In this document: one piece after another, positions 4,629-58,589 of the stretch
Layout of the letters: each line of letters begins with the position of its first letter
How positions within the stretch are numbered: position 1 is the stretch's first letter
Assembly: GCA_002269645.1 (NCBI GenBank)
Contig: NIVC01000719.1
Span: 114,020-178,019 of the forward strand
Direction: 5' to 3'
Source: Macrostomum lignano
Taxonomy: Eukaryota
Length of the DNA stretch: 64,000 nt
Program-made: the position numbers and the translations under genes
The notes under the pieces: model-generated
The model's input: the letters and a program-made list of their open reading frames with translations, nothing else
Told to the model about the DNA's origin: nothing
The model's database searches: none

Positions 4629-5212
4629 AGTTAGGCGACTTGAACTCAAGCGATTCAGCCTTAGACACATCTCAGGCTGCTGCATTTCGTTATTATCCCA
4701 ACTTCTACTAAATTGCGATCTGTGGTGTGTCGAATGTAAGCCTGGTTGCTGTTTTTGATTGCGTTTATAATGATAAATACATTGGCGGATCATTACCGAG
4801 TATGGCGAAAGTATAATCTTTATTTGCGCGTTTTGACAGGAAAAAAATATGCTTAGAGTTGTTTTTTAAGACCTTCTGGGATATTAAGGGTATGATGAAA
4901 AAAACTTTTTTTCGGTGTCCATAGTCACCCGGTGCTACCCGTTGAAGGTGCCGACGGCGTCGGGGTGATGATGGAATGCTTGAGAGACTAGCTGTGGATG
5001 TTGAGCAGTTGGGTGCCTCGGCGCTCTGGTGATGAACCCCGATGACATTATCGAGGAACCAGGTCTAGCGCGCCGAGCACCTTCTCAGGAATGTCTGAGC
5101 TGTCACAGGCGCTTGCGCTGACCTCTCAGGCTGCTGCTGTCTGCTCCTCCCTCCTGTTCTTCGAGCGCATTCGCGTTCGTTTATGGGTCGGATAGTTACA
5201 GTTACAGGGAAG

Positions 5213-5558
5213 GGCCTGTGTGCACCCTGGCGCACTTTAATCGACATTGTCACACAACCGGCGAGAGGCATTACTGCCCATTCTGCCGACTCCCATGAGC
5301 AGGCACACAAGTGCGCGGATACGTACGCAGTCATAAGCACAGGCATATACTCGCACAGGAGTGTACAGCGGCCCTAACTTTATCGTTAGACATGTAAACT
5401 TCCTGTGCCTGTGGGGGGGTTGGTCCTGATCATGGGCGTTAATTGCATGAGCAGAGCAGAGATTCCAATTTAGCTCTAAATTAATGTGACTGCACTTGGA
5501 ATCGAGCCTGGGCCGCTGGTACATCAGAGCGCCGCGTCAGACCACTGGGCTACGGCCC
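5213..5558 (-). mobile_element. tRNA-derived SINE, family A, copy 2
   Basis: Reverse complement begins GGGCCGTAGCCCAGTGGTCTGACGCGGCGCTCTGATGTACCAGCGGCCCAGGCTCGATTCC; body matches 1253-1590. Confidence 0.75.
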
Positions 5559-14475: not shown

Positions 14476-17400
14476 TCAGGGCAGCGGCACAATCACCTCC
14501 ACGTAGTTCACAGGGAAGAAGCCGCGCTTGCCTTTCAGTTCGCCTTCGAACCAGTTCTCGTCTACCTGGGCAATTAGTTGGATTACGTCACCCTCGTCGA
14601 ATGCCAGCTCGGTGTTGTTCTCGGCGGTGAAGGTGAACAGAGCCCGGCAGGTGGGCGTGCCCGACTTCGCTGCGGAGGGAGGGAGGGAGGGGCAGTGAGT
14701 GGGTGACTCTGTGCGGCCCAATGTGTCTGGAGCGTAAGCGCTACTGCGAGGAAAAAATGAACTTAGAGAAAATTAGGAGGAAAGGAGGTAGGAGTGTTAA
14801 TAGATGTAGGAAAGGAAAAGGGGGAGACAGAGGAGAGAGGAGGGAAAGAGAGGAAAAGAGAGGGGAAAGAGAGGGAAAGAGAGGGGAAAGAGGGGGAAAG
14901 AGAGGGGAAAGAGGGGGAAAAAGAGGGGGAAAAAGAGGGAAAGAGAGGGGAAAGAGGGGAAAGAGAGGGGAAAGAGAGGGGAAAGAGAGGGGAAAGAGGG
15001 GGAAAGAGAGGGGAAAGAGGGGGAAAAGAGGGAAAGAGAGGGGAAGGAGAGGGAAGAAGAGGGGAAAAGGGGGGAGAGGGGAAAGAGAGGAAGGAGTGTT
15101 AATGGATGTAGAAAGGAAAAAGGAGGAGACAGAAGGGAGAAGGCCAGAGAGGAAAAGAAAGGAGAAAGAGAGGGTAAAGAGAGGGGAAGAGAGGGTAAAG
15201 AAAGGAAAGAGGGGGGAGAGGGAAAAGAGAGGAGAGGGAAAAGAGAGGAAAGAGGGGGAGAGGGAAAAGAGGGAAGAGGGAAAAGAGGGGAAAGAGGGGG
15301 AGGGGAAAAGAGGAAGAGAGCAACCAAAAAGCCCCCCCCCCCGGAATAGCCAGAGCACCTGCAGTCGCTCACCCTGCAGTCGAGGCTTGACGCTGATGGC
15401 TGGGCCGGCTGGCTCATGCGATTTGTCATTAGCCGACAATCGCCACGCATCGCCGCCGCTGCCTCCTCCGGCGCCGCCGATTGCTCCGGCGCCGGCGCTG
15501 GCGCCAAATCTGGCGCCGCTCTGGTCGCTACTAATGCTGCTGCTTTTAGAGGCGCCGCGTACAACTGGCCGGAACGGCACGTGCTCGGACTTGGGCCGAC
15601 TAGCGGCCTGGGAGCGCCTGTTGTAAATTCGGAAAATTATTTTAAAATTCAAATCATCCTACTACTACTAACAGTAATACAATAGGAGCAGAAGTTTATA
15701 ATTTTCATGAATTGAAAATTGACGCACTTTGTTTCCAATCTAGTCTGCAGATTTGATAGAATCCGACAGGCCTCCTGATGATAGACCAGCTCGGCTGAGA
15801 CCAGCTCGTACATGGCCGAGACGTGTTCAGCCTGCGAGGTGATTTAATGTTGATAGGCATTATCTTTGTTTGCAATGTATGTTGTAATTGGAGAGACCGG
15901 TATTTACTGCAACATTTAAGTTCAAGTTTTAAGTTTAATTAGGTGTAAGTTTAGGTTTAGGTTAAGAGCCTAGATTAGGGTTTAGGTTAGGATTTAGGTT
16001 AGGATTTATGTTAGCGTTTAGGCTAAGGCTTAGGTTAGGGTTTAGGTTAGGATTTAGGTTAGGATTTATGTTAGCGTTTAGGCTAAGGCTTAGGTTAGGG
16101 TTTAGGTTAGGATTTAGGTTAGAGTTTAGGCTAAGGCTTAGGTTAGGGTTTAGGTTAGGATTTAGGTTAGGGTTTAGGTTAGGATTTAGGTTAGAGTTTA
16201 GGCTAAGGCTTAGGTTAGGGTTTAGGTTAGGATTTAGGTTAAAGTTTAGGCTAAGGCTTAGGTTAGGGTTTAGGTTAGGATTTAGGTTAGGATTTATGTT
16301 AGCGTTTAGGCTAAGGCTTAGGTTAGGGTTTAGGTTAGGATTTAGGTTAGAGTTTAGGCTAAGGCTTAGGTTAGGGTTTAGGTTAGGATTTAGGTTAGAG
16401 TTTAGGCTAAGGCTTAGGTTAGGGTTTAGGTTAGAGTTTAGGCTAAGGCTTAGGTTAGGGTTTAGGTTAGGATTTAGGTTAGGATTTAGGTTAGAGTTCA
16501 GGCTAAGGCTTAGGTTAGGGTTTAGGTTAGGATTTAGGTTAGCGTTTAGGCTAAAGCTTAGGTTATGGTTTAAGTTAGGGTTTATATATTAAGGCTCAGG
16601 GTAAGGTTTCGGTTTCGGTTTAGGTTAGGATTTATATTAAGGTTTAGGTCAAGGTTAAGGTTAGGGTTTAGCTAGGGCTTAGGTTGGGTCGGCGGGCGAA
16701 TTGTCGGTAGTCAAATGGCTGGTAAGTCAAACACCCATCAATATTGAATATTAACTGTTAAATTTCGTTAACCCTAAAAATAAGAATTAACGTGCAATGA
16801 CACTCGTAAGGAACAAAAACCGTTTCTTGGAAAATTTATGAAGGCTCTTATTTTCTAAAAGTCTAGAATTCTTCCATAAAGTGTTGATTATAAAGACTAT
16901 GCTAAAAGAAATAACAGTTCCCTCTTAATCACAACTTCATGTAAATGAACCACCATTTGGGTGCAAGCTACTTACCCAAGCTAATTGCATTTCGAGCCTT
17001 CAAAAAGTTTCCAAGAAACAATAAAGCGTATCATCCTTATCATTTTACTAATATTGATCTGATTGTTAGTCAGTTCAATAAAATAATATAACTTGAAACT
17101 TGTCTACTAATAGTAGAACAAAAAAAATTCGTTTTGAATTTACATCAGAATTCAAAAAATTGACCATCGCATTTTCTGCCAAATTTTTCGATTCGACGAA
17201 TTTATCTTCGGCCGCGTGCAAATCGTCTTCGTTTGGTCTGCTGCCGCCTGGATTAGGGGAGAATTGGGGGGGGGAATTGATAGGTAGAACAATTAGCAGA
17301 CTAATTTTTTGAAATAATCTGTTTTCTGTCCAGCAAAATTTGGGCAATTAAAATCTGCATACGCTCGTACAAGAATTGGCGCTAATTGCATGCAATAAAA

Positions 17401-20400
17401 GTTGCGCTTTATGGAGCCCTAGCGAAGTTAAAAATTCCTTTGACGCTCCTGTCTAACAGGTGATGCTCCTGTCTAACAGGTGATGATCCTGTCTAACAGG
17501 TGATGCTTCTGTCTAACAGGTGATGCTCCTGTCTAACAGATGATGCTTGTCTAACAGGTGATGCTCCTGTCTAACAGGTGATGCTCCTGTCTAACAGGTG
17601 ATGCTCTAGTCTAACAGGTGATGATCCTGTCTAACAGGTGATGCTCCTGTCTAACAGGTGATGCTTCTGTCTAACAGGTGATGCCCCTGTCTAACAGGTG
17701 ATGCCCCTGTCTAACAGGTGATACTCCTGTCTAACAGGTGATGCTTCAGTCTAACAGACGATACTCCTGTCTAACAGGTGATGCTCCTGTCTAACAGGTG
17801 ATGCTTCTGTCTAACAGGTGATGCCCCTGTCTAACAGGTGATGCTCTAGTCTAACAGGTGATGCTCCTGTCTAACAGGTGATGCCCCTGTCTAACAGGTG
17901 ATGCCCCTGTCTAACAGGTGATGCTTCTGTCTAACAGGTGATACTCCTGTCTAACAGGTGATGCTTCAGTCTAACAGACGATACTCCTGTCTAACAGGTG
18001 ATGCTCCTGTCTAACAGGTGATGCTCCTGTCTAACAGGTGATGCTCCTGTCTAACAGGTGATGCTTCTGTCTAACAGGTGATACTCCTGTCTAACAGGTG
18101 ATGCTCCAGTCTAACAGGTGATGCTCTAGTCTAACAGGTGATGCTTCTGTCTAACAGGTGATACTCCTGTCTAACAGGTGATGCTCCAGTCTAACAGGTG
18201 ATGCTCTAGTCTAACAGGTGATGCTCCTGTCTAACAGGTGATGCTCCAGTCTAACAGACGATACTCCTGTCTAACAGGTGATGCTCCTGTCTAACAGGTG
18301 ATGCTTCTGTCTAACAGGTGATACTCCTGTCTAACAGGTGATGCTCCAGTCTAACAGGTGATGCTCTAGTCTAACAGGTGATGCTCCTGTCTAACAGGTG
18401 ATACTCCTGTCTAACAGGTGATGATCCTGTCTAACAGGTGATGCTCTAGTCTAACAGGTGATGCTTTTGTCTAACAGGTGATGCTTTTGTCTAACAGGTG
18501 ATGCTTCTGTCTAACAGACGATACTCCTGTCTAACAGGTGATGCTCCTGTCTAACAGGTGATGCTCTAGTCTAACAGGTGATGATCCTGTCTAACAGGTG
18601 ATGCTCTAGTCTAACAGGTGATGCTTTTGTCTAACAGTTGATGCTTTTGTCTAACAGGTGATGCTTCTGTCTAACAGGTGATGCTTTTGTCTAACAGGTG
18701 ATGCTCTAGTCTAACAGGTGATACTCTAGTCTAACAGGTGATGCTTTTGTCTAACAGGTGATGCTCTAGTCTAACAGGTGATGCTCCTGTCTAACAGGTG
18801 ATGCTCTAGTCTAACAGGTGATGCTCCTGTCTAACAGGTGATGCTCCTGGTTAACAGGTGATGCTCTAGTCTAACAGGTGATGCTTTTGTCTAACAGGTG
18901 ATGCTTTTGTCTAACAGGTGATGCTCTAGTCTAACAGGTGATGCTCCTGTCTAACAGGTGATGCTCTAGTCTAACAGGTGATGCTCCTGTCTAACAGGTG
19001 ATGCTCCTGGTTAACAGGTGATGCTCTAGTCTAGCAGGTGATGCTTTTGTCTAACAGGTGATGCTCTAGTCTAACAGGTGATGCTCTAGTCTAACAGGTG
19101 ATGCTTTTGTCTAACAGGTGATGCTCCTGTCTAACAGGTGATGCTCTAGTCTAACAGGTGATGCTCCTGTCTAACAGGTGATGCTCCTGGTTAACAGGTG
19201 ATGCTCTAGTCTAACAGGTGATGCTTTTGTCTAACAGGTGATGCTCTAGTCTAACAGGTGATGCTCCTGTCTAACAGGTGATGCTCTAGTCTAACAGGTG
19301 ATGCTTTTGTCTAACAGGTGATGCTCTAGTCTAACAGGTGATGCTCCTGTCTAACAGGTGATGCTCTAGTCTAACAGGTGATGCTCCTGTCTAACAGATG
19401 ATGTTTTTGTCTAACAAGCTTTGCAGGGATGTTGAGTAAAATGGATTAAAAAATACTGATCTATTTCAAAAGTATACAGGCTTCCTAGATACTTTACCTT
19501 CCCCTGCAATTCAGTAAGGTACATGTAGTTGGTGAACAAATTATTAAATTTGTAATAATCTGCAGTTTCCGATCATGATATTGATAATAAGGTATATTTA
19601 CCTTTACGCTTCTTGCAGTCGAAGTCTAGCCGACGACCTTCCAGCTTCTTGAGATGATGCTAAAATTATTATACAAAAATAAAGCTTAGTTTACACTATT
19701 GGAGAGCATTTAAACAATTAAATAAAACTAGACTCACATTAATCTCTTTCAGATCGCGATTCTGCATGGCGGTGAATGGGTCTAGGAAATTCTGCTTAAC
19801 ACTGTCCTCTAGGCTGTATTTGATCTCAGCCATCTGCTTGTAGGCCTCACCGCTGTCAATGAGGGCTTCACCTGGATTAAGTTAAACAGAAACGCTTGCT
19901 GACTCATTTCTGTACACCTTGATCAAACCGCTTTCAAATGGCTGGAGGTAACTGACTCAAATAGCTGGAGGTAACTGACTCAAATGGCTGGAGGTAACTG
20001 ACTCAAATGGCTGGAGGTAACTGACTCAAATGGCTGGAGGTAACTGACTCAAATGGCTGGAGGTAACTGACTCAAATGGCTGCAGGTAACTGACTCAAAT
20101 GGCTGCAGGTAACTGACTCAAATGGCTGGAGGCAACTGACTCAAATGGCTGGAGGTAACTGACTCAAATGGCTGGAGGTAACTGACTCAAATGGCAGGAG
20201 GTAACTGACTCAAATGGCTGGAGGTAACTGACTCAAACGGTGAAAGGTCACAAGTCTCACCTAGACAAGAGTCATGACCAAGATCGTTGCCATGCTTTAT
20301 CATGCAGTCGCCAAGGATGCCCTCAGGCTGGGGGTAAGACAGATTGCGACCTTTGTTCTGCAGATTGTTAAATCCTTTGGCAGCGGTAAGGCGAACGCGG

Positions 20401-26956: not shown

Positions 26957-31205
<4,249 letters not shown>

Positions 31206-32786: not shown

Positions 32787-36101
<3,315 letters not shown>

Positions 36102-42200: not shown

Positions 42201-42650
42201 TTGGGGTGGCGAACGGTGCAGGCCTCTGACTCTACACGCGCCCAGATGGCGAAGTTCAGTGGGTTTTACATGTAAATCCGGTGACTGCGGTGGCCAAAAG
42301 AATATGTCTCCAGAACGACATGTTCTTGGCCAACCAATTCTGCACGATAGTGGCTATGTGCGCTAGGGCCCCGTCCGGCTGAAAAAACGTAAGGCTTACC
42401 AGCTGTGATCCTGCATGGTGACCCACGGAAGTAGTTTCCTGTCTTGCCTGGGGCAAGCAGACACTTGAGTACCAGTGACCAGTCACTGTGGCACCTTCCT
42501 CGAGTAGAGTGGGTGGCAGGATGCCACACCGCCGGAAGAAGACTGCTGTCATGACCTTGCCGACACTTCTCTCGCGTAAGAATCTGATTGGGGCATCCTC
42601 TTCTTCCAATCCACTGGGATTTCGTCTCTGGGTCATAAAAGTAAACCCAA

Positions 42651-45191
42651 CCCTAGATGAAGTTCTGTTTACTCATTCTTGGCAGATCTGTTCTTACTTA
42701 AATTTCTTAACAGATCTGTGAACTTTGGTTAACACATTCTTAACAGATCTGTTCTTACTTAAATCTCTTAGCAGATCTGTATCTGCTTTTGTCTTACAAG
42801 ATCTTACAAATCTTTGCAAGCCATTTTTTATTGTTTAATACGTAAAAAACATTCGTGATTTTTTAGAAAATACTTATGAGGTAAAGAGAAAACAAAATTT
42901 CTAACTGTATATCAGAAAAAAGACTTTCGTATATTTTCACATTTCTCTGCTGGATCTTGTCAGATCAGTTCTTGCAGATCTGTACAGACCAGTTTTGAAA
43001 AGTGTCTGAATTGTTTTTTTCCACAAAATATTTAACATAATAGTAATTGCGTTTTTTAATGATTTGTATTTATTTTAGTTGTTCTTCTGGCAGCCAACAG
43101 TAAATGAATTTGTTTAAATATTCTTTCTGCAGTTCTGAACATAGTGGACCCTTATAGTTTGAATTCTCGCTCTTGCAATAATCTCAGTTCTTTCTTTTGA
43201 CTTTGCCGAATACGTAATTTTTAATTCCTTAAATTGTTTCATAGTGTAGTATCACTATTTTTTACTTTTTTAGCCATAATAACTTTTTTGATTAAGTATA
43301 GCTATGGCTTTAAATGAAGAGCAGATTGCGTCATCAATTAAAAAAATTTGACATAATTGACAGACTGACTATAAAATGGATGATATGCTATATATATATC
43401 TATATCATATATATATCTAGGCTTGTTTCCTACTCCCAGGCCTATAAGTATGAGTAGGCCTAGGCCTATGACTTTGTTCTATGCTTTAATAGAAACAGAA
43501 TGCATGTCTAGACCTAGTGATGTCCATTAATAATTCATTAATCCATTAATAATTCAGAAATTCAGTTACATACATAGATCAGTATTTTTGTAGTCTTTTG
43601 CATTTCATTATATTATATTTATATATACCTAGTTCTAGCCCCTAGGCTAGGGCTAGGCTAGTTCTAGTGACCTAGCTAGTAAGTAAATCTTAATTAAATA
43701 GGTCTATTCTGTTTTTGTTTGTTTTATATATGCTTATCTAGATTTATAAATAGGTAGACTGACATATCTGTAAAACTTGGTTTTAATCCCTCCTTGATTT
43801 TAAACACTTAGGTTAAGAATGTAATGTCTATTTTTAGTAAATAGTGTTATAACTAGGCTTATCATTTTAATTTTAAAATAAAATAGGCCCTACTCTACTA
43901 AAAATTGTAATTGCTATATAGGGTATAGTTTTTCTGAATTAGAATTAAACCTGGATGCTTAAATATAGGCTTGTGGTTGTTAGAAAGTTATCTTAAGCCT
44001 TGACCTACTATTTGAAGAATATAGATAGGCATAGCAAAATCTAAAATTATTTATACTAGATAAGCCTAGATAAATAATATGAAAAATATAGAATAGAAGA
44101 AAAACAGGTCTAAATTTAATTAGACCAAAGAACTTTTACAAAAGTTATTACTCTGACTATTTAAAAACATAACAATGATATTTGTTTTATGTTTTAGTTA
44201 TTTTGAATTGAATATTAATGTTTAAAATCCCAGAACTTTACTAAAATTTTCCCTTTCATTGCAGCTACTTTACATGGTCAATATGGCATCGCTACTTATG
44301 GGTTCCAAGCTTGTCTTTATACAAATGATTGCTAAAAGTGGCAAGCATCCTATGATTGCTAAAAGAAAAAATGAAGCCAGCCTAAAGTAAAAATGCAACA
44401 TGATAAAGAGCCCTAAAGTATTACTAAGAGCTCTTATAGACCTACTTTTATTGATAACAAAGTAAGCTTTCTAGCAATATTGACTTTAAAATCTTTCAGT
44501 ACTGGACTCTTTCAGTTTCAATTATTTGCAAACCAATTTAATTGTACATTGTAGTAAAAGATGCACCTGGTTTTTTTTCAAATGTTTCTGCTTCTATTTT
44601 TTAGTTTCTAAAAGTATTGCTCACCCTAATTTTATTAGTCCATTGTACCATTAGTATTTTTTCTATTGAATGTGTGCTTAACTTTTGTTTTGAAGTTGAC
44701 TTATTTTTTGCTTGTGCTATTTCCCTTGTGCATACAAGTTTTATTTCATGAGCATATATGTGTATTTGTTTACATTTTCACAAATAAATATGTCTACTTT
44801 ATTTTAATTGTTCAATGGCATTTGCTTTTGTTCTGGCAGCTTACTAGCACAATACTAAAAGTGCAGAATCAAATAAGAAAGTCCTGTCATAACTCGTGTT
44901 CTTTATTGGAATTAAATTAGTGCATTAGGGTTTTATAAATGGATTACTAAACAGATCTTGGAAGATTTGATAAGACGGACAATGCATTCAATTGGTAAAG
45001 CTTAATACATCTTACAAGATCTGCCCAGATCTCCTAAGATCTGCTCGTGCAGACAGTGCAAGATCTTCCTGCAGATCTTGTAAGTTCTGCCTATACATTT
45101 TAATAGTGCAGATCTGTTACGTTCTTGCAAGAACGTAGCGAGAAGCTCCAGACAGATCTGCTAAGAAATGGCATGACGATTTCATCTAGGG
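42651..45191. mobile_element. Non-autonomous TIR element (CMC/EnSpm-like), copy 1
   Basis: Ends CCCTAGATGAA / TTCATCTAGGG; multiple subterminal AGATCT palindromic repeats at both ends; 2541 bp; no intact transposase. Confidence 0.8.
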
Positions 45192-45384
45192 TCATATACA
45201 TTTTTAGGGCGCACACAGTAGACCACTAGCGCGTAAGCGCTCGCAGAACAGGCAGGAGGAGCAGGCAGCTGCCTGAGGGGTCAGTGCAAGCGCCTGCAAG
45301 TCAGCAATGAGGCAGTCCGTCAGAGTGGCAGTGCAGGCCGGGCCGCGGCGCAGTTGCTCGGTTGACCGGTGCAGCAGAGCCTGA

Positions 45385-47924
45385 CCCTAGATGAAGTTGT
45401 TTACTCATTCTTGGCAGATCTGTTCTTACTTAAATTTCTTAACAGATCTGTGAATTTTGGTTAACACATTCTTAACAGATCTGTTCTTACTTAAATCTCT
45501 TAGCAGATCTGTATCTGCTTTTGTCTTACAAGATCTTACAAATCTTTGCAAGCCATTTTTTATTGTTTGGTACGTAAAAAACATTCGTGATTTTTTAGAA
45601 AATACTTATGAGGTAAAGAGAAAACAAAATTTCTAACTGTATATCAGAAAAAAGACTTTCGTATATTTTCACATTTCTCTGCTGGATCTTGTCAGATCAG
45701 TTCTTGCAGATCTGTACAGACCAGTTTTGAAAGGTGTCTGAATTGTTTTTTTCCACAAAATATTTAACATAATAGTAATTGCGTTTTTTTAATGATTTGT
45801 ATTTATTTTACTTGTTCTTCTGGCAGCCAACAGTAAATGAATTTGTTTAAATATTCTTTCCGCAGTTCTGAACATAGTGGACCCTTATTGTTTGAATTCT
45901 CGCTCTTGCAATAATCTCAGTTCTTTCTTTTGACTTTGCCGAATACGTAATTTTTAATTCCTTAAATTGTTTCATAGTGTAGTATCACTATTTTTTACTT
46001 TTTTAGCCATAATAACTTTTTTGATTAAGTATAGCTATGGCTTTAAATGAAGAGCAGATCGCGTCATCAATTAAAAAAATTTGACATAATTGACAGACTG
46101 ACTATAAAATGGATGATATGCTATATATATATCTATATCATATATATATCTAGGCTTGTTTCCTACTCCCAGGCCTATAAGTATGAGTAGGCCTAGGCCT
46201 ATGACTTTGTTCTATGCTTTAATAGAAACAGAATGCATGTCTAGACCTAGTGATGTCCATTAATAATTCATTAATCCATTAATAATTCAGAAATTCAGTT
46301 ACATACATAGATCAGTATTTTTGTAGTCTTTTGCATTTCATTATATTATATTTATATATACCTAGTTCTAGCCCCTAGGCTAGGGCTAGGCTAGTTCTAG
46401 TGACCTAGCTAGTAAGTAAATCTTAATTAAATAGGTCTATTCTGTTTTTGTTTGTTTTATATATGCTTATCTAGATTTATAAATAGGTAGACTGACATAT
46501 CTGTAAAACTTGGTTTTAATCCCTCCTTGATTTTAAACACTTAGGTTAAGAATGTAATGTCTATTTTTAGTAAATAGTGTTATAACTAGGCTTATCATTT
46601 TAATTTTAAAATAAAATAGGCCCTACTCTACTAAAAATTGTAATTGCTATATAGGGTATAGTTTTTCTGAATTAGAATTAAACCTGGATGCTTAAATATA
46701 GGCTTGTGGTTGTTAGAAAGTTATCTTAAGCCTTGACCTACTATTTGAAGAATATAGATAGGCATAGCAAAATCTAAAATTATTTATACTAGATAAGCCT
46801 AGATAAATAATATGAAAAATATAGAATAGAAGAAAAACAGGTCTAAATTTAATTAGACCAAAGAACTTTTACAAAAGTTATTACTCTGACTATTTAAAAA
46901 CATAACAATGATATTTGTTTTATGTTTTAGTTATTTTGAATTGAATATTAATGTTTAAAATCCCAGAACTTTACTAAAATTTTCCCTTTCATTGCAGCTA
47001 CTTTACATGGTCAATATGGCATCGCTACTTATGGGTTCCAAGCTTGTCTTTATACAAATGATTGCTAAAAGTGGCAAGCATCCTATGATTGCTAAAAGAA
47101 AAAATGAAGCCAGCCTAAAGTAAAAATGCAACATGATAAAGAGCCCTAAAGTATTACTAAGAGCTCTTATAGACCTACTTTTATTGATAACAAAGTAAGC
47201 TTTCTAGCAATATTGACTTTAAAATCTTTCAGTACTGGACTCTTTCAGTTTCAATTATTTGCAAACCAATTTAATTGTACATTGTAGTAAAAGATGCACC
47301 TGGTTTTTTTTCAAATGTTTCTGCTTCTATTTTTTAGTTTCTAAAAGTATTGCTCACCCTAATTTTATTAGTCCATTGTACCATTAGTATTTTTTCTATT
47401 GAATGTGTGCTTAACTTTTGTTTTGAAGTTGACTTATTTTTTGCTTGTGCTATTTTCCTTGTGCATACAAGTTTTATTTCATGAGCATATATGTGTATTT
47501 GTTTACATTTTCACAAATAAATATGTCTACTTTATTTTAATTGTTCAATGGCATTTGCTTTTGTTCTGGCAGCTTACTAGCACAATACTAAAAGTGCAGA
47601 ATCAAATAAGAAAGTCCTGTCATAACTCGTGTTCTTTATTGGAATTAAATTAGTGCATTAGGGTTTTATAAATGGATTACTAAACAGATCTTGGAAGATT
47701 TGATAAGACGGACAATGCATTCAATTGGTAAAGCTTAATACATCTTACAAGATCTGCCCAGATCTCCTAAGATCTGCTCGTGCAGACAGTGCAAGATCTT
47801 CCTGCAGATCTTGTAAGTTCTGCCTATACATTTTAATAGTGCAGATCTGTTACGTTCTTGCAAGAACGTAGCGAGAAGCTCCAGACAGATCTGCTAAGAA
47901 ATGGCATGACGATTTCATCTAGGG
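45385..47924. mobile_element. Non-autonomous TIR element (CMC/EnSpm-like), copy 2, direct repeat of copy 1
   Basis: Same termini; 2540 bp; about ten substitutions or indels versus copy 1 seen by eye. Confidence 0.8.
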
Positions 47925-49783
47925 AAGTTTCATCCCCTGTCAGGATATTGTTTACCAATTTTGAAGCCCCTGCATCAAATTTGTTAAGCATGAAGTTCAG
48001 AGCATCTTCATCGAGCAGTCTTCGGACACTGGCCACTTGGCCAAATTCGGACGGCCTTCGAGTTCGTCGTCGTCTAGCTCCAGGCAGCCAGAACGAAATC
48101 GGCCAAACTACTTGTACACCATTGTCTAGGATGGGGCTTCATCACCCAATGCTTTTTGAAGCATCTGCACGCACTCAGAGGCAGATTGGCCAAGTCGAAA
48201 TTGAACAAGAATTGTGACTCGTCTGTCGCGCTCTGTCAATCGCAGGGCAGGGTCTGCAGTCGTATCACTTTTTCGACCACTGCGTCGTAGCATTTTAGTC
48301 AAAGAGGCTGAAAACTGACATGAAAGATTTCAATATCTACTGAAAGAAGCACATAAAATCTTCTTTTATTTGCATAAAAAGAAGTTAAATCTTTCGCGAA
48401 CTTACTAAGCAACACGTATGACATGACGTACGAGTATTGTGAAAGTCTAAAGTGTCAAGTTTTTTTGCAACACCCAGCTAGAGTACAATTTTGCATAAAA
48501 ACTCAAATGTAGTCTTGCAAGATTGCGGTCGGATGGACTCTGCTCTCAAGGAAATCTTTTACTCCAGATAAAATGAAAAACTTCATCCCCTATAATCTCC
48601 TAATCTGTGCATTTACATCTGACACTGAATTAAGGAATTAGGAATCAATTATAAGAACCAACTTCAGTTGCTCAGTTGCAGCAGTACATGTAGTAACGCA
48701 CTGCTGGTGCTCCAATGGCTTAAGGGTAAAAAGAGACGATCGAACTGCGTTTTGTATTTATCTTCCGACAAACCAACCAACCTGAATCCGTCCGAGGGTT
48801 CGTCCAAGGGCACTCACAATAAGTTTATAAAAAAAACAGCTTGAAAAAGTATTGTCATGAGAGAACGGCAACACTCACAATACAGTTGTGATTTTTAAAT
48901 GAATTTCGCAAGCACTTTCCTTTTTGCACAGCGCTGAATGGGTTTTTGGCCATAGACAAATTCGGTAGAAAAAAGTCCGTCTAGACCAAAGATCATATAT
49001 ACTGTAAGATCTATGGTCCAGACTCGCAGACGTCGGTACCTCCGGCACTCGGGTCCTTTGAAACTTCTCACAATAGCAATCCGGCCCGCTCAGAGTTTGT
49101 GTCTCTTCTCATCTCTCTTCTCAGTTCTCTCCTCTCTCCCCTCTTAACTCTTTTCTCTCCTCTCCTCTCTTATCTCCTCTTATCTTCTCTCTCATCTTGC
49201 CTTTCGCCTCTCACCTCTCATCTCTCATATCCTCCAACATTTTCTCTCTCAAATCACACCACAGAGACAGTAACAGCAGGAATATCACCGGAATTTAGCT
49301 TGCAATTTGCACGAATTTCGAATTCAGCGTTCTTATGACTTGATTTGTAAACTATTAACTTTGCCAAAGCAAGTAAATATAAATCTGATATATATAGCTA
49401 GATATGGGAGTAAAGTACGCGCATGTTAATATCTCAGCTGTCTGGAGCAGACGTCGCGTCACTTGTAATATCAGGCAGTTTATTGAGATGGAGAGGAGCC
49501 CCCTCTCCCCCTCGCAGTATTGGTCCTCACCTGAGTCTGCTTGCGTGAAGCAAATCGATCTTGGGTGGAAAAAAGAGAAGTAACAAGCTGAAAACCAATA
49601 TATATAGCTTTCTTAACTTGCCAATCAATCATTCAATATCGAGGGTATACTTGTGTAGCCCCGGCGGCCACAATTCGTATGTTAATGGATAGGAGAAACA
49701 AATGCGACTTAAAAACACCTTATTACAACAACAATAATAGCGAGAGAGCTTAGCTAGACAATCTTGGGTTCAATTTTTAAGCC

Positions 49784-50452
49784 TCAGCTAATGCCAAGGA
49801 AGGCCTTTATCCCGCTGAAGCCTCTAGCCCGACTGTCTGTAGTTGTTGAGGACGCTTTTTTCAACGCGCCGCCCAACGGCATGTAGTGCTCAAATTCCGC
49901 TTGATTAACGTAGAGAGCCACATCCTGGCAGCCCTGGCTGTAGTAGTCGCGCAACAGTTTCTTCCGACGCTCGGTCAACTGAAACGCCACCCGGGTCCGG
50001 TAGACGTGATAGGCGTGCACCCGGCCCGACCGGAGCCGGAACGCCGCCACAAGCTCGTAGCGTTCGTGCGACTCGCGAACTTTGTGCCTATAGAGCTGCT
50101 CCAGGAGCGTCACCTCAGATTCTGTTAGCTGACGTGGCGGCGGCTGCTGCTGCTGTTGTTGCTGTTGCTGCTGCTGCTGATGTTGCTGCTGGTGGGCTAA
50201 CGCTTCAGGTGATAAGCCAGAATTTGCGGATGAGTTAGCAGTGTCTGGCTGCTGCTGGTGCTGGTGCGGCTGGTCCTGCTGCTGCTGGCCGCAGCTCCGG
50301 CCGCCAGAGATTCCCGAGGCGAAGCCGACTCCCCTACGCGAGTACGGCAACAGATCCCACACGTAGGTTGGCTGCTGGCGGGAGCTTCCGCCGCCACCGC
50401 CGCCTCCGCCGCCGCCACCGGTTGTCCCGCCGAAGGAGAAACCGCCTGGCAT
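49784..50452 (-). CDS. Hypothetical protein with polyG/polyQ N-terminus and an unrecognised C-terminal region (possibly the last exon of a larger gene)
   Basis: 222-aa GC-rich ORF; an AG acceptor sits immediately before the ATG; the C-terminal half (~100 aa) is non-repetitive. Confidence 0.55.
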   Translation of the reverse strand: MPGGFSFGGTTGGGGGGGGGGGSSRQQPTYVWDLLPYSRRGVGFASGISGGRSCGQQQQDQPHQHQQQPDTANSSANSGLSPEALAHQQQHQQQQQQQQQQQQPPPRQLTESEVTLLEQLYRHKVRESHERYELVAAFRLRSGRVHAYHVYRTRVAFQLTERRKKLLRDYYSQGCQDVALYVNQAEFEHYMPLGGALKKASSTTTDSRARGFSGIKAFLGIS

Positions 50453-51204: not shown

Positions 51205-52690
51205 AGAGATGCGGGAGAGAGGGGGACAGGGAGATGCGGGAGATGCGGGAGATGTTGAAGATGCGGGAGAGGGGACAGGGAGATGCGGGAGAGAGAGGGG
51301 GACAGGGAGATGCGGGAGATGCGGGAGATGTTGGAGATGCGGGAGAGGGGACAGGGAGATGCGGGAGAGAGAGGGGACAGGGAGATGCGGGAGAGAGAGA
51401 GGGACAGGGAGATGCGGGAGAGAGAGGGGGACAGGGAGATGCGGGAGAGAGAGAGGGACAGGGAGATGCGGGAGAGAGAGGGGGACAGGGAGATGCGGGA
51501 GAGAGAGAGGGACAGGGGGATGCGGGAGAGAGAGGGGGACAGGGAGATGCGGGAGAGAGAGGGGGACAGGGAGATGCGGGAGAGAGAGGGGGACAGGGAG
51601 ATGCGGGAGATGCGGGAGATGTTGGAGATGCGGGAGAGGGGACAGGGAGATGCGGGAGAGAGAGGGGGACAGGGAGATGCGGGAGAGAGAGAGGGACAGG
51701 GAGATGCGGGAGAGAGAGGGGGACAGGGGGATGCGGGAGAGAGAGAGGGACAGGGAGATGCGGGAGAGAGAGGGGGACAGGGAGATGCGGGAGAGAGAGG
51801 GGGACAGGGAGATGCGGGAGAGAGAGAGGGACAGGAAATGCGGGAGAGAGAGGGGGACAGGGAGATGCGGGAGAGAGAGGGGGACAGGGAGATGCGGGAG
51901 AGAGAGGGGGACAGGGAGATGCGGGAGAGAGAGGGGGACAGGGAGATGCGGGAGAGAGAGAGGGACAGGGAGATGCGGGAGAGAGAGGGGGACAGGGAGA
52001 TGCGGGAGAGAGAGGGGGACAGGGAGATGCGGGAGATGCGGGAGATGTTGGAGATGCGGGAGAGGGGACAGGGAGATGCGGGAGAGAGAGGGGGACAGGG
52101 AGATGCGGGAGAGAGAGAGGGACAGGGAGATGCGGGAGAGAGAGGGGGACAGGGGATGCGGGAGAGAGAGAGGGACAGGGAGATGCGGGAGAGAGAGGGG
52201 GACAGGGAGATGCGGGAGAGAGAGGGGGACAGGGAGATGCGGGAGAGAGAGAGGGACAGGAAATGCGGGAGAGAGAGGGGGACAGGGAGATGCGGGAGAG
52301 AGAGGGGGGCAGGGAGATGCGGGAGAGAGAGGGGGACAGGGAGATGCGGGAGAGAGAGGGGGACAGGGAGATGCGGGAGAGAGAGAGGGACAGGGAGATG
52401 CGGGAGAGAGAGGGGACAGGGAGATGCGGGAGAGAGAGGGGGACAGGGAGATGCGGGAGATGCGGGAGATGCGGGGGGTGCGGGAGGTGCGGGAGGTCCG
52501 GGAGATGCGGGAGGTGCGTGCGGGAGATGCGGGAGATGCGGGAGATGCAGGAGATGCGGGAGATGCGGGAGACGCGGGAGATGCGGGAGATGCGGGAGAT
52601 GCGCGAGATGTTGGAGATGCGGGAGAGGGGACAGGGAGATGCGGGATATGCGGGAGATGCGGGAGATGCGGGAGATGCGGGAGATGCGAG
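51205..52690. repeat. Purine-rich minisatellite (GGGACAGGGAGATGCGGGAGAGAG core)
   Basis: About 1.5-kb array of roughly 27-29-bp units and 9-bp subunits. Confidence 0.9.
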
Positions 52691-53339
52691 AGCTCACATA
52701 GCATAAAGAGAAGATGGGAGAGAGCCGGAGAGGAAGGCACTGAGCCAAGTCTGCCTGGAGCAGTGTAATCCAGTCATTAATCCTGATGGCTTCTTTTCTA
52801 ATCAGCCGCGTTGCAGGCACGCGGGCCGCCCCGCGGAGCCAAATCCCAGGCCGATCGATTCAAACGCTGCCAGAGGGAAACCGCGCGAGTTTAGAGATTG
52901 TGCTGCCGGATATGAAAGTTGATTAATGCCAATCCAGTATTCTGAGCTGAATTGAGCAACCTGCAACTGGCCAGACAGAGGCTCTACATGCATCGGTCGC
53001 AGGCTGTATAAGCTTGAGCTTTGCTATAATTCATGAGCAGCTCTAACCCCCATCAGTTCATATTATAGCTATTGAATATGATGATTATAGCTATACTGGC
53101 TTGTGCGTTCGTGACTTGCGTCGCATTAATTATATAAAGGGCTATTTGGGGGATTAGCGGCAGCAGATGTTTCAGATTATTCTTTTTATGACGCTCAGAG
53201 CGGCGAAACCTGAAGTCTAGTGGATAAATATTTGAGGGTGGGAATTCTCTGTCTTAACAGGCTTAACAATGCGCTGGTACAGCGAAATATACTGAAGTAA
53301 TGATATACGATGTATTAAAATAGAGTAATACACCCACAC

Positions 53340-54745
53340 ATTAAAATAGACACCGGAAACACATTAGAATAGACACCGGAAGCACATTAGAATAGACACC
53401 GGAAGCACATTAGAATGGACACCGGAAGCACAAACTAATATAGACACCGGAAATACTAATATAGACACTGGAAACATATTAAAATAGACACCAACAACAA
53501 CAACAACAACAAACAACAAAATACGCAGTCAGCGTCACAGGGCGCGCTTTAAGGCCGGGTCGCGAATGAACGCCTCGCCGCCGGCCGAATCCGGGACGCC
53601 GGCGCCAGCCAGTAGGCAGTCGACGAAACGCCGAGTGCGCGCCTGCCCCCGCCGGTAGGGTGCCTGCAGCGTTAGCAGCAGCACCTCCTGCACCGGCTCT
53701 GGGCAGTACGGCTCGGCGCGGATGATGTGGCCTGCCAGCTGGAGTCGCCGATTGCGCAGCAGGTCGCTTGGCGGACCAGGCCGGCGCGGCGATACAAAGC
53801 CGCGTTGGTCACTCGCTCGTAGCCGATCTTGAAGGCGGCGCGCAGCAGGCCAGAGTGCGCCGCATCAACTTGTTGTTCGAGCGACTCCGTCAGCGTCCAG
53901 GTCTCGGCGATGTACAGCAGGACGGTCTCGATCACCGCCTGTAACAACGCGGCCCTCTGGCGGTCAGGTAAGGCCTCGGACTGCAGGACGGCCCTCACAG
54001 AACGAAAGGCAGCCCAGGCAAGCCCGCGGCGACGCCGCAGATCCTCGCGGACACCGAGAACCAGACCGCCGAGGTAGACGAACTGCTGACAACGCGGAAA
54101 CTCCTCGCCTGTCCATCAGCGCCTCGGAACAAAATCGCAGCCTCGATGTCGTCCGGCACGCAGAGCACGACGGTCTTCTGCGTGTTGTCCACCAGGCCGA
54201 CACTCGCCGCAACAGCATCTAGCTTGTCCAGTTGTCGCCGGGCGCCCTCGACAGTTGAGGACAGCAGGGCGAGATCGTCGGCGTATCCAAGCACGCTGAG
54301 CCGCCTCTCCGGTTGACGTCGACTCACGCGTCGCCGCAACAGAAAGCCGTCGTCGTTGGTAGGAAGAGCGGTCCGCAGCACCCAGTCAAGCACCAGAACG
54401 AACAGGAACGGTGCAAGCGTATCTCTCACCGGACAAAATAGACACCGGAAACACAAACTAATATAGATACCGGATTTAGACACCGGAAACACTAATATAG
54501 ACACCGGAAACACTAATATAGACACTGGAAACACTAATATAGACACCGAAAACACTAATATAGACACCGGAAACACTAATATAGACACCGGAAACACTAA
54601 TATGACACTAACACCGGAAACACTAATATAGACACCGGAAACACTAATATAGACACATGAAACACTAATATAGACACCGGAAACACTAATATAGACACCG
54701 AAAACACTAATATGACACTAACACCGGAAACACTAATATAGACAC
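53340..54745. repeat. 21-bp minisatellite (GACACCGGAAACACTAATATA) split by a LINE
   Basis: Arrays at about 53340-53492 and 54435-54745. Confidence 0.85.
53493..54434 (-). mobile_element. 5'-truncated RTE-like non-LTR retrotransposon
   Basis: RT motifs DTLAPFLFVLVLDWVL, GYADDLALL, NTQKT, AWAAF...VLLYIAETWTL; (GTT)n 3' tail; 12-bp TSD AAAATAGACACC at 53481-53492 and 54435-54446; frameshifted. Confidence 0.9.
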
Positions 54746-55437: not shown

Positions 55438-56462
55438 GAGAGGGACAGGGAGATGCGGGAGAGAGGGAGAGAGGGACAGGGAGATGCGGGAGAGAGGGAG
55501 AGAGGGACAGGGAGATGCGGCAGAGAGGGAGAGAGGGACAGGGAGATGCGGGAGAGAGGGAGAGAGGGACAGGGAGATGCGGCAGAGAGGGAGAGAGGGA
55601 CAGGGAGATGCGGCAGAGAGGGACAGGGAGGTGCGGCAGAGAGGGACAGGGAGATGCGGCAGAGAGGGACAGGGAGATGCGGCAGAGAGGGACAGGGAGA
55701 TGCGGCAGAGAGGGAGAGAGGGACAGGGAGATGCGGCAGAGAGGGACAGGGAGATGCGGCAGAGAGGGACAGGGAGATGCGGCAGAGAGGGACAGGGAGA
55801 TGCGGCAGAGAGGGACAGGGAGATGCGGCAGAGAGGGACAGGGAGATGCGGGAGAGAGGGACAGGGAGATGCGGCAGAAAGGGAGAGAGGCACAGGGAGA
55901 TGCGGGAGAGAGGCACAGGGAGATGCGGGAGAGAGGCACAGGGAGATGCGGGAGAGAGGCACAGGGAGATGCGGGAGAGAGGCACAGGGAGATGCGGGAG
56001 AGAGGCACAGGGAGATGCGGGAGAGAGGCACAGGGAGATGCGGGAGAGAGGCACAGGGAGATGCGGCAGAGAGGGAGAGAGGGACAGGGAGATGCGGCAG
56101 AGAGGGACAGGGAGATGCAGCAGAGAGGGACAGGGAGATGCGGCAGAGAGGCACAGGGAGATGCAGCAGAGAGGGACAGGGAGATGCGGCAGAGAGGGAC
56201 AGGGAGATGCGGCAGAGAGGGACAGGGAGATGCGGCAGAGAGGGAGAGAGGGACAGGGAGAGAGGGAGAAAGGGACAGGGAGAAAGGGAGAAAGGGACAG
56301 GGAGATGCGGGAGAGAGGGAGAGAGGGACAGGGAGAGAGGGAGAAAGGAACAGGGAGATGCGGGAGAGAGGGAGAGAGGGACAGGGAGAGAGGGAGAAAG
56401 GGACAGGGAGATGCGGGAGAGAGGGAGAGAGGGACAGGGAGATGCGGCAGAGAGGCACAGGG
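55438..56462. repeat. Purine-rich minisatellite related to 51205-52690
   Basis: GGGACAGGGAGATGCGG(G/C)AGAGA units. Confidence 0.9.
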
Positions 56463-56997
56463 AGCTAAACAGCAGGGGTCCTCATGAAAAGCGAGCCGCA
56501 CTCAGACATAAAGAGAATTAATTTATTGGTCGCAGTCGATAAAATGAAGAAAAATCAAACACCCAAGCCGACTTTCGTCTTTAATGGCAATGACTCAACT
56601 TAGAAAATGGTGAAAACGGACTATTTTCAGCAGCATATAAGATAGATGTCCGTCTGCCCTGTTTGCATGAAGGCAACAAACACTTCGCAGAGGCTCTAAG
56701 ATTGACAGTATTGATAGCATCAGTTTTTTATTTCGCAGAGAAATTTATATCCAACCCCAAGGCTCTCAAATTGCAGCTGAATGTTTGCGAAGTGCCCGCC
56801 ATTCGCGCTATCAGTCGGGCCAATCTCGTTCGCATTTTTTCCTCTTGCTCGGCGGCAAAGGGCGTGAACGTGAATGCCCCAATGGAAATGCTTTGTCACC
56901 ATGGATACACAGCGGAGGGGATGGAGCTCACATGAGAGACCGGCTGGAAGGGCAACTTTGATGAAAATTCAAACTCGAAGGGTGCTTCTATAAAATA

Positions 56998-58120
56998 ATA
57001 CCCACCACTGGAAGGGTATTTATACAAAAGATACCCACCACTGGAAGGGTATTTATACAAAAGATACCCACCACTGGAAGGGTATTTATACAAAAGATAC
57101 CAACCTCTGGAAGGGTATTTATACAAAAGATACCCACCACTGGAAGGGTATTTATACAAAAGATACCCACCACTGGAAGGGTATTTATACAAAAGATACC
57201 CACCACTGGAAGGGTATTTATACAAAAGATACCCACCACTGGAAGGGTATTTATACAAAAGATATCCACCACTGGAAGGGTATTTATACAAAAGATACCC
57301 ACCACTGGAAGGGTATTTATACAAAAGATATCCACCACTGGAAGGGTACTTATACAAAAGATACCCACCACTGGAAGGGTATTTATACAAAAGATACCCA
57401 CCACTGGAAGGGTATTTATACAAAAGATACCAACCTCTGGAAGGGTATTTATACAAAAGATACCCACCACTGGAAGGGTATTTATACAAAAGATACCAAC
57501 CTCTGGAAGGGTATTTATACAAAAGATACCCACCACTGGAAGGGTATTTATACAAAAGATACCCACCACTGGAAGGGTATTTATACAAAAGATACCCACC
57601 ACTGGAAGGGTATTTATACAAAAGATATCCACCACTGGAAGGGTATTTATACAAAAGATACCCACCACTGGAAGGGTATTTATACAAAAGATATCCACCA
57701 CTGGAAGGGTACTTATACAAAAGATACCCACCACTGGAAGGGTATTTATACAAAAGATACCCACCACTGGAAGGGTATTTATACAAAAGATATCCACTAC
57801 TGGAAGGGTATTTATACAAAAGATACCAACCTCTGGAAGGGTATTTATACAAAAAGATACCCACCTTTGTAGGGGTATTTATACAAAAGATACCTACCTC
57901 TGTAGGGGTATTTATACAAAGGATACCCACCTCTGGAAGGGTATTTATACAAAAGATACCCACCACTGAAGGGGTATTTATACAACGGATACCCACCTCT
58001 GGAAGGGTATTTATACAACGGATACCCACCTCTGGAAGGGTATTTATACAACGGATACCCACCTCTGGAAGGGTATTTATACAACGGATACCCACCACTG
58101 GAAGGGTATTTATACAAAGG
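56998..58120. repeat. 33-bp minisatellite
   Basis: TACCCACCACTGGAAGGGTATTTATACAAAAGA, about 34 copies. Confidence 0.95.
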
Positions 58121-58589
58121 ATTTACACAAAGGCCCTGGCTATAACTATAGGTTAGCTATTGATCGTTTTACTAAATTTAACCCCCACCCTTTTTGAAAG
58201 CCGATCAATACAGTCTCGCGTTCGTGCACTTGTATAGTAAATGCTTATATAAGTTCCTGAATGGGCCACCAAACAGCGATGGTCGATAGGCCAGTTCTCA
58301 TTTTGGATGATTTAAATTCTATAGCTACTCACTCATACAGAGGTAGGAGGGAGCAGACAGAGAGGTGCGATCCAATCAAAAGTCTATCTATCCATCTATA
58401 CATTGTCAGTGGCGTATGCAGCGGCGAGTATAGGAGGCGTCCCACCCTCCCGACATCGACCGCTCCTCAAGAAAACTAAATGAAAGAGGCAACACCGAAC
58501 TCGACAAAGGACAGGAGCTCAACTTCCGCCACCTCTTGGACGTGGCATCCAGCGGCCGAGAAGACAGGGGTGGCTAGGGGCCCGCACAC

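What the first reader, a model, noticed from the sequence alone, without database searches (positions are those of the whole stretch)
42651..47924. Eukaryotic composite transposon: two direct-repeat 2.54-kb TIR elements plus a 193-bp passenger inserted as one unit
Seen: copies at 42651-45191 and 45385-47924, each with its own CCCTAGATGAA/TTCATCTAGGG termini, bracket a unique GC-rich 193-bp spacer. Only the outer ends carry a duplicated target (cccAA|CCC ... GGG|AAgttt); the inner flanks are TC and GA. Deleting the 5274-bp block and one AA restores ACA GGG GAT GAA ACT TGG GTT TAC TTT TAT GAC CC (TGDETWVYFYDP), the mariner catalytic motif. The spacer is not mariner sequence, so local tandem duplication does not explain it. 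Known: CCC/CAC termini, a 2-bp TSD and subterminal repeats are typical of CMC (EnSpm/Chapaev/Mirage) elements, and composite transposition is a classic bacterial mechanism that is much less often documented in animals. Inference: the two outer ends were mobilised together and carried host DNA.
Basis: partly seen in the sequence, partly recalled or inferred. Interest (0 to 1): 0.82.

Follow-up and report, generated by a model that had tools for sequence, protein, structure and literature searches.

The report
Two-copy composite DNA transposon insertion
Two near-identical copies of a 2.5-kb non-coding cut-and-paste transposon, with 193 bp of foreign DNA between them, landed as one 5.3-kb block inside a dead mariner transposon in what is almost certainly the flatworm Macrostomum lignano; this is a tidy animal example of a mechanism already well described in maize and bacteria, not a new kind of element.

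Summary
Copies A (42651-45191) and B (45385-47924) are 99.5% identical and direct. Each carries the 11-bp inverted termini CCCTAGATGAA/TTCATCTAGGG and AGATCT-core subterminal repeats. A 193-bp, 62% GC spacer lies between them. Only the outer ends are flanked by a duplicated AA. Removing the block and one AA restores TGDETWVYFYDPETK, which is identical in nine intact mariner relatives and colinear with Mos1, so the target duplication is 2 bp.

The best reading is a single integration that used the 5' end of A and the 3' end of B, like a maize Ac macrotransposon. A reversed-ends, re-replication "composite insertion" gives the same architecture and cannot be excluded.

- The spacer is not unique. 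Its nt 15-136 are about 85% identical to window 5078-5228.
- The copy differences are clustered: 9 of 10 events lie in the first 677 bp, which points to gene conversion or a mosaic origin.
- CMC membership is untested, because no transposase and no other copies could be found.

No further DNA from this genome could be reached, so solo-copy duplications, a donor locus and read support remain unchecked. This is a new member of a known kind, of moderate interest.

The parts
42328..42650 (-). Mariner fossil, C-terminal part of the DDE domain (residues 179-286 of the intact relative P0121); the target of the insertion
   Evidence: tblastn of P0121; Pfam Transposase_1; frameshifted and truncated
42649..42650 (.). 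Left copy of the 2-bp target site duplication (AA)
42651..45191 (+). Element copy A: 2541 bp, 30% GC, non-coding (longest stop-to-stop frame 93 aa)
42651..42661 (+). 5' terminal inverted repeat of A, CCCTAGATGAA
42676..42981 (+). 5' subterminal repeats of A: six AGATCT cores, four of them within a 28-bp unit repeated 3.6 times (TTCTTAACAGATCTGTTCTTACTTAAAT, 42676-42780)
44953..45159 (+). 3' subterminal repeats of A: eight AGATCT cores, a 10-bp unit repeated 3 times (45015-45044) and a perfect 20-nt palindrome (45118-45137)
45181..45191 (-). 3' terminal inverted repeat of A
45192..45384 (.). 193-bp passenger, 62% GC, flanked by TC and GA. It has no inverted termini or duplication of its own and matches no Rfam family. 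It is a fragment of a dispersed repeat.
45385..47924 (+). Element copy B: 2540 bp, same orientation as A, with the same subterminal repeats (about 45416-45713 and 47686-47892, placed by offset from copy A rather than read directly)
45385..45395 (+). 5' terminal inverted repeat of B
47914..47924 (-). 3' terminal inverted repeat of B
47925..47926 (.). Right copy of the 2-bp target site duplication (AA)
47925..48293 (-). Mariner fossil, N-terminal part: HTH domain and the stretch up to the first catalytic Asp (residues 1-85 and 155-178 of P0121). About 69 codons are missing between 47997 and 48039.
5078..5228 (-). Relative of the passenger elsewhere in the window: 85% identity over 117 aligned columns, with indels. 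It is a family member, not the donor.

Best explanation
The unit is a 2.54-kb non-autonomous cut-and-paste DNA transposon. It has 11-bp inverted termini and clusters of AGATCT-core motifs near both ends, which are presumably transposase-binding sites served by a transposase made elsewhere.

At a donor site, two copies sat in the same orientation 193 bp apart inside a copy of a GC-rich dispersed repeat. The transposase paired the outermost ends, the 5' end of A and the 3' end of B, instead of the two ends of one element. It cut out the whole 5274-bp block and inserted it with a 2-bp staggered cut at an AA. That AA lies in the codons just after the first catalytic aspartate of an already decaying mariner copy. 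This is macrotransposition, the eukaryotic counterpart of a bacterial composite transposon.

Shown: the architecture, the four intact ends, the single outer 2-bp duplication and the exact empty site. Inferred: the donor arrangement, the trans-acting transposase, and the later gene conversion that made the 3' 1.86 kb of the copies almost identical.
For: - The two copies are full length and 99.5% identical, in direct orientation.
- All four 11-bp termini are intact, and the motif occurs nowhere else in the window.
- Each element has 14 AGATCT motifs, all within the first 330 bp or the last 240 bp. About 0.9 are expected by chance, and only 6 occur in the other 58.7 kb.
- A is flanked by AA/TC and B by GA/AA, so neither has its own duplication, while the block as a whole is flanked by AA/AA.
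- Removing the block and one AA restores TGDETWVYFYDPETK, identical in nine intact relatives, colinear with Mos1, with exactly two surplus bases.
- The duplication boundaries fall exactly on transposon termini at all four junctions. An assembler or an unequal crossover would not produce that.
- The passenger is one colinear piece of a repeat family, as expected for a contiguous donor segment.
- Precedent: Ac macrotransposons excise and reinsert in maize (PMC9910405, which cites Huang and Dooner 2008 and Wang et al. 2022).
Against: - This is a single locus in a single assembly, with no read-level support.
- No solo copy was available to show that 2 bp is the family's normal duplication length.
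- No donor, footprint or second composite copy was found.
- The differences between A and B are strongly clustered (9 of 10 events in the first 677 bp; KS p = 2e-4). Simple composite transposition does not predict this, so an added conversion step is needed.
- The reversed-ends, re-replication route gives the same end product.
Confidence: 0.55

Rival explanations
1. Alternative (reversed-ends) transposition with re-replication, as described for maize Ac/fAc. The facing inner ends of a B...A pair are cut and inserted into an unreplicated target. The elements and a little of their outer flanks are replicated again, the forks abort, and the two broken ends are joined. The product is target-A-flank/flank-B-target with one target duplication.
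For: The final architecture is identical to what is seen here: composite insertions are 'transposon termini flanking segmental duplications', bounded by one target duplication, with an end-joining junction inside (PMC4270019). The first 14 nt of the spacer (TCATATACATTTTT) do not align with the repeat relative, so an internal junction is conceivable.
Against: Spacer nt 15-136 form one colinear piece of a single repeat family, which suggests a contiguous rather than chimeric passenger. Both re-replication forks would have had to abort within 193 bp in total, far less than the kilobase-scale flanks reported in maize. The process has not been documented in animals in the papers I read.
Confidence: 0.17
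2. A solo element first inserted at the AA. A later double-strand break in or at it was repaired by synthesis-dependent copying from an ectopic A-spacer-B locus. This converted the solo copy into the dimer without the composite ever transposing.
For: It would explain the outer duplication equally well. The mosaic pattern of differences shows that recombination or conversion has acted on these copies.
Against: It still needs an A-spacer-B locus elsewhere, plus an extra event, so it is less economical. It does not specifically predict the observed pattern of divergent 5' thirds and near-identical 3' two-thirds.
Confidence: 0.1
3. Assembly artefact: a false tandem duplication or chimeric join in a repeat-rich, neopolyploid genome assembled from long reads.
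For: The source is probably Macrostomum lignano. Its assemblies are described as difficult, repeat-rich and prone to collapsed or chimeric sequence (PMC10733133). One of the indels is in a homopolymer run.
Against: The copies differ at 9 substitution sites. The join is a 193-bp GC-rich sequence with no run of N. All four boundaries fall exactly on element termini. The two outer flanks fit together to the base as one mariner codon series. A misjoin of two loci would not do that.
Confidence: 0.08
4. The 5.27-kb block is a single element with 2.5-kb terminal direct repeats, for example a non-autonomous LTR-type retroelement with a very short internal region.
For: Two long direct repeats at 99.5% identity around a short internal segment resemble a young LTR element.
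Against: The termini are CCC...GGG, not TG...CA. The duplication is 2 bp, not 4-6 bp. The spacer starts TCATATAC (no tRNA primer-binding site) and ends GCAGAGCCTGA (no polypurine tract). Each repeat has its own 11-bp inverted termini and oppositely oriented subterminal motif clusters, typical of a cut-and-paste element. The LTR hallmarks used here are established knowledge, not tool results.
Confidence: 0.03

Closest known systems
Maize Ac/Ds macrotransposons (hAT superfamily; Huang and Dooner 2008; Wang et al. 2022, as cited in PMC9910405)
   Same: Two closely linked elements in direct orientation. The outer 5' and 3' ends are used in one reaction. The intervening host DNA travels with them, and a single family-typical target duplication flanks the block.
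   Different: The transposon family is different and unclassified here (2-bp rather than 8-bp duplication). The host is an animal, the passenger is only 193 bp, and the event is inferred from one fossil insertion rather than seen genetically with excision footprints.
Maize composite insertions from reversed-ends transposition with re-replication (PMC4270019)
   Same: The end product is the same: element, flank DNA, element, bounded by one target duplication.
   Different: In maize the passenger is a chimera of the two outer flanks joined by end joining or recombination, and is kilobases long. Here the passenger looks like one colinear 193-bp repeat fragment.
Bacterial composite transposons (two IS copies flanking cargo, such as Tn5, Tn9 or Tn10; established knowledge)
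   Same: The logic is the same: the outer ends of two copies act as the ends of a larger mobile unit with one target duplication.
   Different: Here the element is eukaryotic and non-autonomous, with the transposase supplied in trans. The cargo has no evident function, and there is no sign that the composite has spread as a family.
CMC (CACTA/Mirage/Chapaev) non-autonomous elements of animals, for example the CMC-NA MITEs and ENS1_Cis of Ciona (PMC6004678)
   Same: A 2-bp target duplication, short inverted termini that start with C, and subterminal repeats.
   Different: Those elements have invariant CAC...GTG termini, whereas this one has CCC...GGG. Chapaev makes 3-4-bp duplications (PMC4079192). 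No transposase link could be made.
piggyBac superfamily
   Same: The terminus CCCTAGATGAA starts like the canonical piggyBac terminus (CCCTAGA..., from memory).
   Different: piggyBac inserts at TTAA and duplicates it. Here the target was CCAAGT with AA duplicated and no TTAA.

Membership tests
Composite DNA transposon / macrotransposon | Two complete copies of one element family flank non-element DNA | tested here: met
   Copies are 2541 and 2540 bp at 99.5% identity, all four 11-bp termini are intact, and the spacer is 193 bp
Composite DNA transposon / macrotransposon | One target duplication flanks the outer ends, and the individual elements lack their own | tested here: met
   Outer flanks AA/AA; A has AA/TC; B has GA/AA
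Composite DNA transposon / macrotransposon | Removing the block and one duplication copy restores the target exactly | tested here: met
   TGDETWVYFYDPETK is identical in 9 intact mariner relatives; exactly 2 surplus bases
Composite DNA transposon / macrotransposon | The duplication length equals that of solo insertions of the same family | not testable with these tools
   No other copy in the window, in the protein collection, or in the metagenome, prokaryote-genome and viral collections
Composite DNA transposon / macrotransposon | A donor locus, an excision footprint or further copies of the same composite | not testable with these tools
   The rest of this genome could not be reached. The only relative of the spacer in the window is 85% identical, too diverged to be the donor.
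CMC (CACTA/Mirage/Chapaev) superfamily | A DDE transposase with the CMC-specific conserved residues, in the element or in an autonomous partner sharing its termini | not testable with these tools
   The element has no frame longer than 93 aa, and no partner was found
CMC (CACTA/Mirage/Chapaev) superfamily | Short target duplication (2 bp in animal CACTA, 3-4 bp in Chapaev) | tested here: met
   2 bp at this one insertion; literature values from PMC6004678 and PMC4079192
CMC (CACTA/Mirage/Chapaev) superfamily | Termini 5'-CAC...GTG-3' (CCC in Mirage-type elements, from memory) | tested here: inconclusive
   The termini are CCC...GGG. The papers I read give CAC...GTG as invariant for Chapaev and animal CACTA. 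I could not check the CCC variant.
piggyBac superfamily | Insertion at TTAA with TTAA duplicated | tested here: not met
   The target was CCAAGT with AA duplicated
LTR retrotransposon | TG...CA repeat ends, 4-6-bp duplication, and a primer-binding site and polypurine tract in the internal region | tested here: not met
   CCC...GGG ends, 2-bp duplication, spacer ends TCATATAC... and ...GCAGAGCCTGA
mariner (the target element) | HTH_48 and mariner DDE transposase domains | tested here: met
   Pfam HTH_48 E = 1.8e-07, above the curated cut-off. Transposase_1 scores 22.2 bits, just under its 24-bit cut-off, on the degraded conceptual protein. Mos1 E = 1e-14. Intact relatives are 52% identical. The copy is dead: frameshifts, stops, about 69 codons deleted, truncated after residue 286, and no inverted termini found.

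The most novel reading that the evidence does not exclude
The block is the product of alternative transposition coupled to re-replication, a route so far shown only for Ac/Ds in plants. Alternatively, it is a composite that is still mobile and has begun to spread as a unit in a flatworm, carried by an unclassified transposon family with a 2-bp duplication and CCC termini whose transposase is still active. Either reading would give an animal system for studying how paired DNA transposons move and duplicate host DNA. It might also yield a new cut-and-paste tool for Macrostomum.
Probability: 0.15. Interest if true: 0.6.

Novelty: new member of a known kind. Interest (0 to 1): 0.36.

Why it matters
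Paired DNA transposons that act together are a known source of segmental duplication, gene shuffling and chromosome breakage in maize. Naturally fixed examples with base-exact junctions are rarely reported in animals.

This locus is a clean structural example because the target is a conserved transposase motif, so the empty site can be reconstructed without a second allele. If the family is still active in Macrostomum lignano, a laboratory model with transgenesis, the mechanism could be tested directly there.

On present evidence it is one fossil event of a known type, carrying a functionless repeat fragment.

Tried and rejected
1. Other copies through protein space. I joined 23 stop-to-stop frames from the element, the spacer and the inner junctions into one query. 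There were no hits at E <= 0.001. A single long query of low-complexity frames may have cost some sensitivity.
2. Other copies through DNA patterns.
   - The 5' end pattern found nothing in JGI metagenomes.
   - A looser pattern (terminus plus first subterminal motif) found nothing in GTDB genomes or IMG/VR.
   - It gave one metagenome hit, L002, which is a chance match inside a bacterial coding region with no other similarity.
3. The same locus in another assembly. The exact-protein look-up of the neighbouring 222-aa ORF was not on record. The best contig carrying the proteasome gene (L001, ENA) is from a different species, with 76% nucleotide identity in the exon.
4. Other copies, or an autonomous partner, in the window. 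nhmmer and sensitive blastn found nothing. The near-match ACCTAGATGAA at 36549 lies in unrelated sequence.
5. The spacer as an RNA gene. No Rfam match, even at E <= 1.
6. Mariner inverted termini around the fossil were not found.
7. piggyBac, LTR-element and assembly-duplication readings were rejected on the target sequence, the termini and the junction structure (see the rival explanations and the membership test).
8. A literature search for the terminus sequence returned only unrelated primer matches.
9. Yuan and Wessler 2011, the source of the CMC definition, is not held.
Full report
**What is there**

The block is as described. Copy A (42651-45191, 2541 bp) and copy B (45385-47924, 2540 bp) align end to end at 99.5% identity in the same orientation. 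The element is 30% GC. Its longest stop-to-stop frame is 93 aa, so it is non-autonomous.

The 11-mer CCCTAGATGAA occurs exactly four times in the 64-kb window. These are the four element ends, forward at the 5' ends and reversed at the 3' ends.

Each copy carries 14 AGATCT cores, mostly as the palindrome CAGATCTG. All lie in the first 330 bp or the last 240 bp. About 0.9 are expected from composition, and only six occur in the remaining 58.7 kb. The 5' cluster includes a 28-bp unit repeated 3.6 times. The 3' cluster includes a 10-bp unit repeated 3 times and a perfect 20-nt palindrome. This is the usual anatomy of a cut-and-paste transposon with subterminal transposase-binding sites.

Between the copies lie 193 bp of 62% GC sequence.

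**The target and the duplication**

The block sits in a dead mariner element on the minus strand. Pfam finds HTH_48 and the mariner DDE domain, the latter just under its curated cut-off on this degraded sequence. PDB search finds Mos1 at E = 1e-14. The closest intact relatives are 52% identical. The copy has frameshifts and stops, has lost about 69 codons, and is truncated after residue 286.

Joining the flanks and removing one AA gives ...NNILTGDETWVYFYDPETK.... In nine intact relatives this stretch reads TGDETWVYFYDPETK with no gap, and the T and W on either side of the junction are invariant. Mos1 aligns without a gap as IVTGDEKWIFFVNPKRK.

tblastn places residue 178 on 47926-47928 and residue 179 on 42647-42649. 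That leaves exactly two surplus bases, so the event duplicated 2 bp (AA). Longer duplications are excluded because the flanks do not repeat beyond 2 bp.

Taken singly, A is flanked by AA/TC and B by GA/AA. Neither has a duplication of its own.

**The source organism**

A proteasome Rpt6 exon at about 34450-35075 differs by one substitution and a 3-residue gap from a UniProt protein of Macrostomum lignano over 194 residues. The next-best hits are at most 94% identical. The window is therefore from this flatworm or a very close relative.

Its genome is described as about 75% repeats, neopolyploid and hard to assemble. That fits the 47 tandem-repeat rows found in this window.

**New observations**

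First, the spacer is not unique. Its nt 15-136 align colinearly, with indels, to 5228-5078 on the minus strand at 85% identity. The score is 93.5 against 20.6 +/- 3.0 for shuffled spacers. The passenger is thus essentially one contiguous fragment of a dispersed GC-rich repeat. At 85% identity the relative is a family member, not the donor.

Second, the differences between A and B are not spread evenly. Nine of ten events lie in the first 677 bp and one lies in the remaining 1864 bp (KS p = 2e-4; largest-gap p = 0.004). GC content is about the same in both parts (0.299 and 0.301). Some recombination has therefore acted on the pair. Either the 3' two-thirds were homogenised between the tandem copies, or the 5' third of one copy was converted from a diverged relative.

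**Mechanism**

The most economical account is one integration that used the 5' end of A and the 3' end of B. The supporting points are:
- four intact termini;
- transposon-exact boundaries at all four junctions;
- one duplication at the outer ends only;
- a perfectly restorable target;
- a passenger that is not target sequence.

This is what maize geneticists call macrotransposition, where closely linked Ac/Ds elements in direct orientation excise and reinsert as a unit (PMC9910405).

I rate it at 0.55, and not higher, because a second documented route gives the same product. In reversed-ends transposition during S phase, re-replication of the elements and their outer flanks is followed by end joining. 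The result is a "composite insertion" bounded by one target duplication (PMC4270019). The colinearity of the passenger and its shortness argue for the simpler route, but they do not exclude the other (0.17).

The remaining rivals are:
- ectopic gap repair of a solo insertion from an A-spacer-B template (0.10), which needs an extra event;
- an assembly artefact (0.08), which is unlikely given nine substitutions between the copies, no gap, transposon-exact boundaries, and flanks that fit to the base;
- an LTR-type element (0.03), which fails on termini, duplication length and internal signals.

**Family**

A 2-bp duplication that is not TA, termini starting with C, and subterminal repeats are compatible with the CMC group. 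Animal CACTA elements making 2-bp duplications are documented (PMC6004678).

However, those elements and Chapaev have invariant CAC...GTG termini, and Chapaev makes 3-4-bp duplications (PMC4079192). That Mirage-type elements start with CCC, and that ISL2EU also makes 2-bp duplications, is my recollection and was not checked here.

The terminus also resembles the start of the piggyBac terminus, but there is no TTAA at the target. Without a transposase or a partner element, the superfamily stays open.

**What could not be done**

None of the collections reached it:
- The protein search with concatenated element frames found nothing.
- The DNA pattern scans found nothing real in metagenome, prokaryote-genome or viral collections (the single hit was a chance match).
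- The look-up of the neighbouring ORF was not on record.
- The only related contig is from another species.

**Verdict**

The core interpretation, that the block was mobilised as one unit through its outer ends, is the best reading. The superfamily assignment and the exact route are unproven.

The mechanism is known from plants and bacteria, and no function is attached to the cargo. This is a new member of a known kind and of moderate interest (0.36).

Noticed in passing
window 42651-45191 compared with 45385-47924: The differences between the two copies are clustered. Nine of ten events fall in the first 677 bp and one in the remaining 1864 bp (KS p = 2e-4). This points to gene conversion between the tandem copies or a mosaic origin.
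   Followed up: partly
window 5078-5228 (minus strand), and 5540-5590: An 85%-identical relative of the 193-bp passenger lies 37 kb away. About 350 bp upstream on the same strand is a stretch that looks by eye like tRNA A and B boxes (TAGCCCAGTGG ... GGCTCGATTCC). ARAGORN and Rfam do not call a tRNA there, so a SINE origin is only a guess.
   Followed up: partly
window 34450-35075 (minus strand), also 33348-33648 and 35772-35909: Exons of a 26S proteasome Rpt6 (regulatory subunit 8) gene. The large exon is 98% identical to a Macrostomum lignano UniProt entry, which identifies the likely source organism.
   Followed up: yes
whole window, e.g. 17441-19416, 28722-29548, 51206-52692, 55447-56464, 56998-58122: Minisatellites are very dense. 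Tandem Repeats Finder reports 47 rows at score 150 or more, including a 20-bp unit repeated 99 times and long purine-rich arrays. These arrays create spurious long ORFs in several frames.
   Followed up: no
window 15939-16689: A degenerate telomere-like array (units TTAGGT / GGTTTAGGTTAG, about 120 hexamer copies) lies in the interior of the window.
   Followed up: no
window 47997-48039: The mariner fossil lacks about 69 codons (residues 86-154 of its intact relatives) here. It also carries stops and frameshifts, so it was probably already dead or decaying when hit, or has decayed since.
   Followed up: partly
window 53995-54597 (minus strand): An ORF with a weak reverse-transcriptase match (RVT_1, E = 1.9e-06, below the Pfam cut-off), probably a retroelement remnant.
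   Followed up: no
window 49784-50452 (minus strand): A 222-aa ORF starting with ATG lies 1.9 kb from the right junction. It has poly-G and poly-Q tracts and a non-repetitive C-terminal half. It has no credible Pfam domain, and its exact sequence is not on record in the protein-to-contig index.
   Followed up: partly
window 26957-27391: The end of this ORF matches the start of a protein kinase domain (Pkinase, E = 7e-05, below cut-off). It may be an exon of a kinase gene.
   Followed up: no
L001 8870-9673: In the related-species contig carrying the orthologous proteasome gene (ENA ERZ25070917), a Tc3-type transposase ORF (HTH_Tnp_Tc3_2 and DDE_3) sits about 330 bp upstream of the gene.
   Followed up: no
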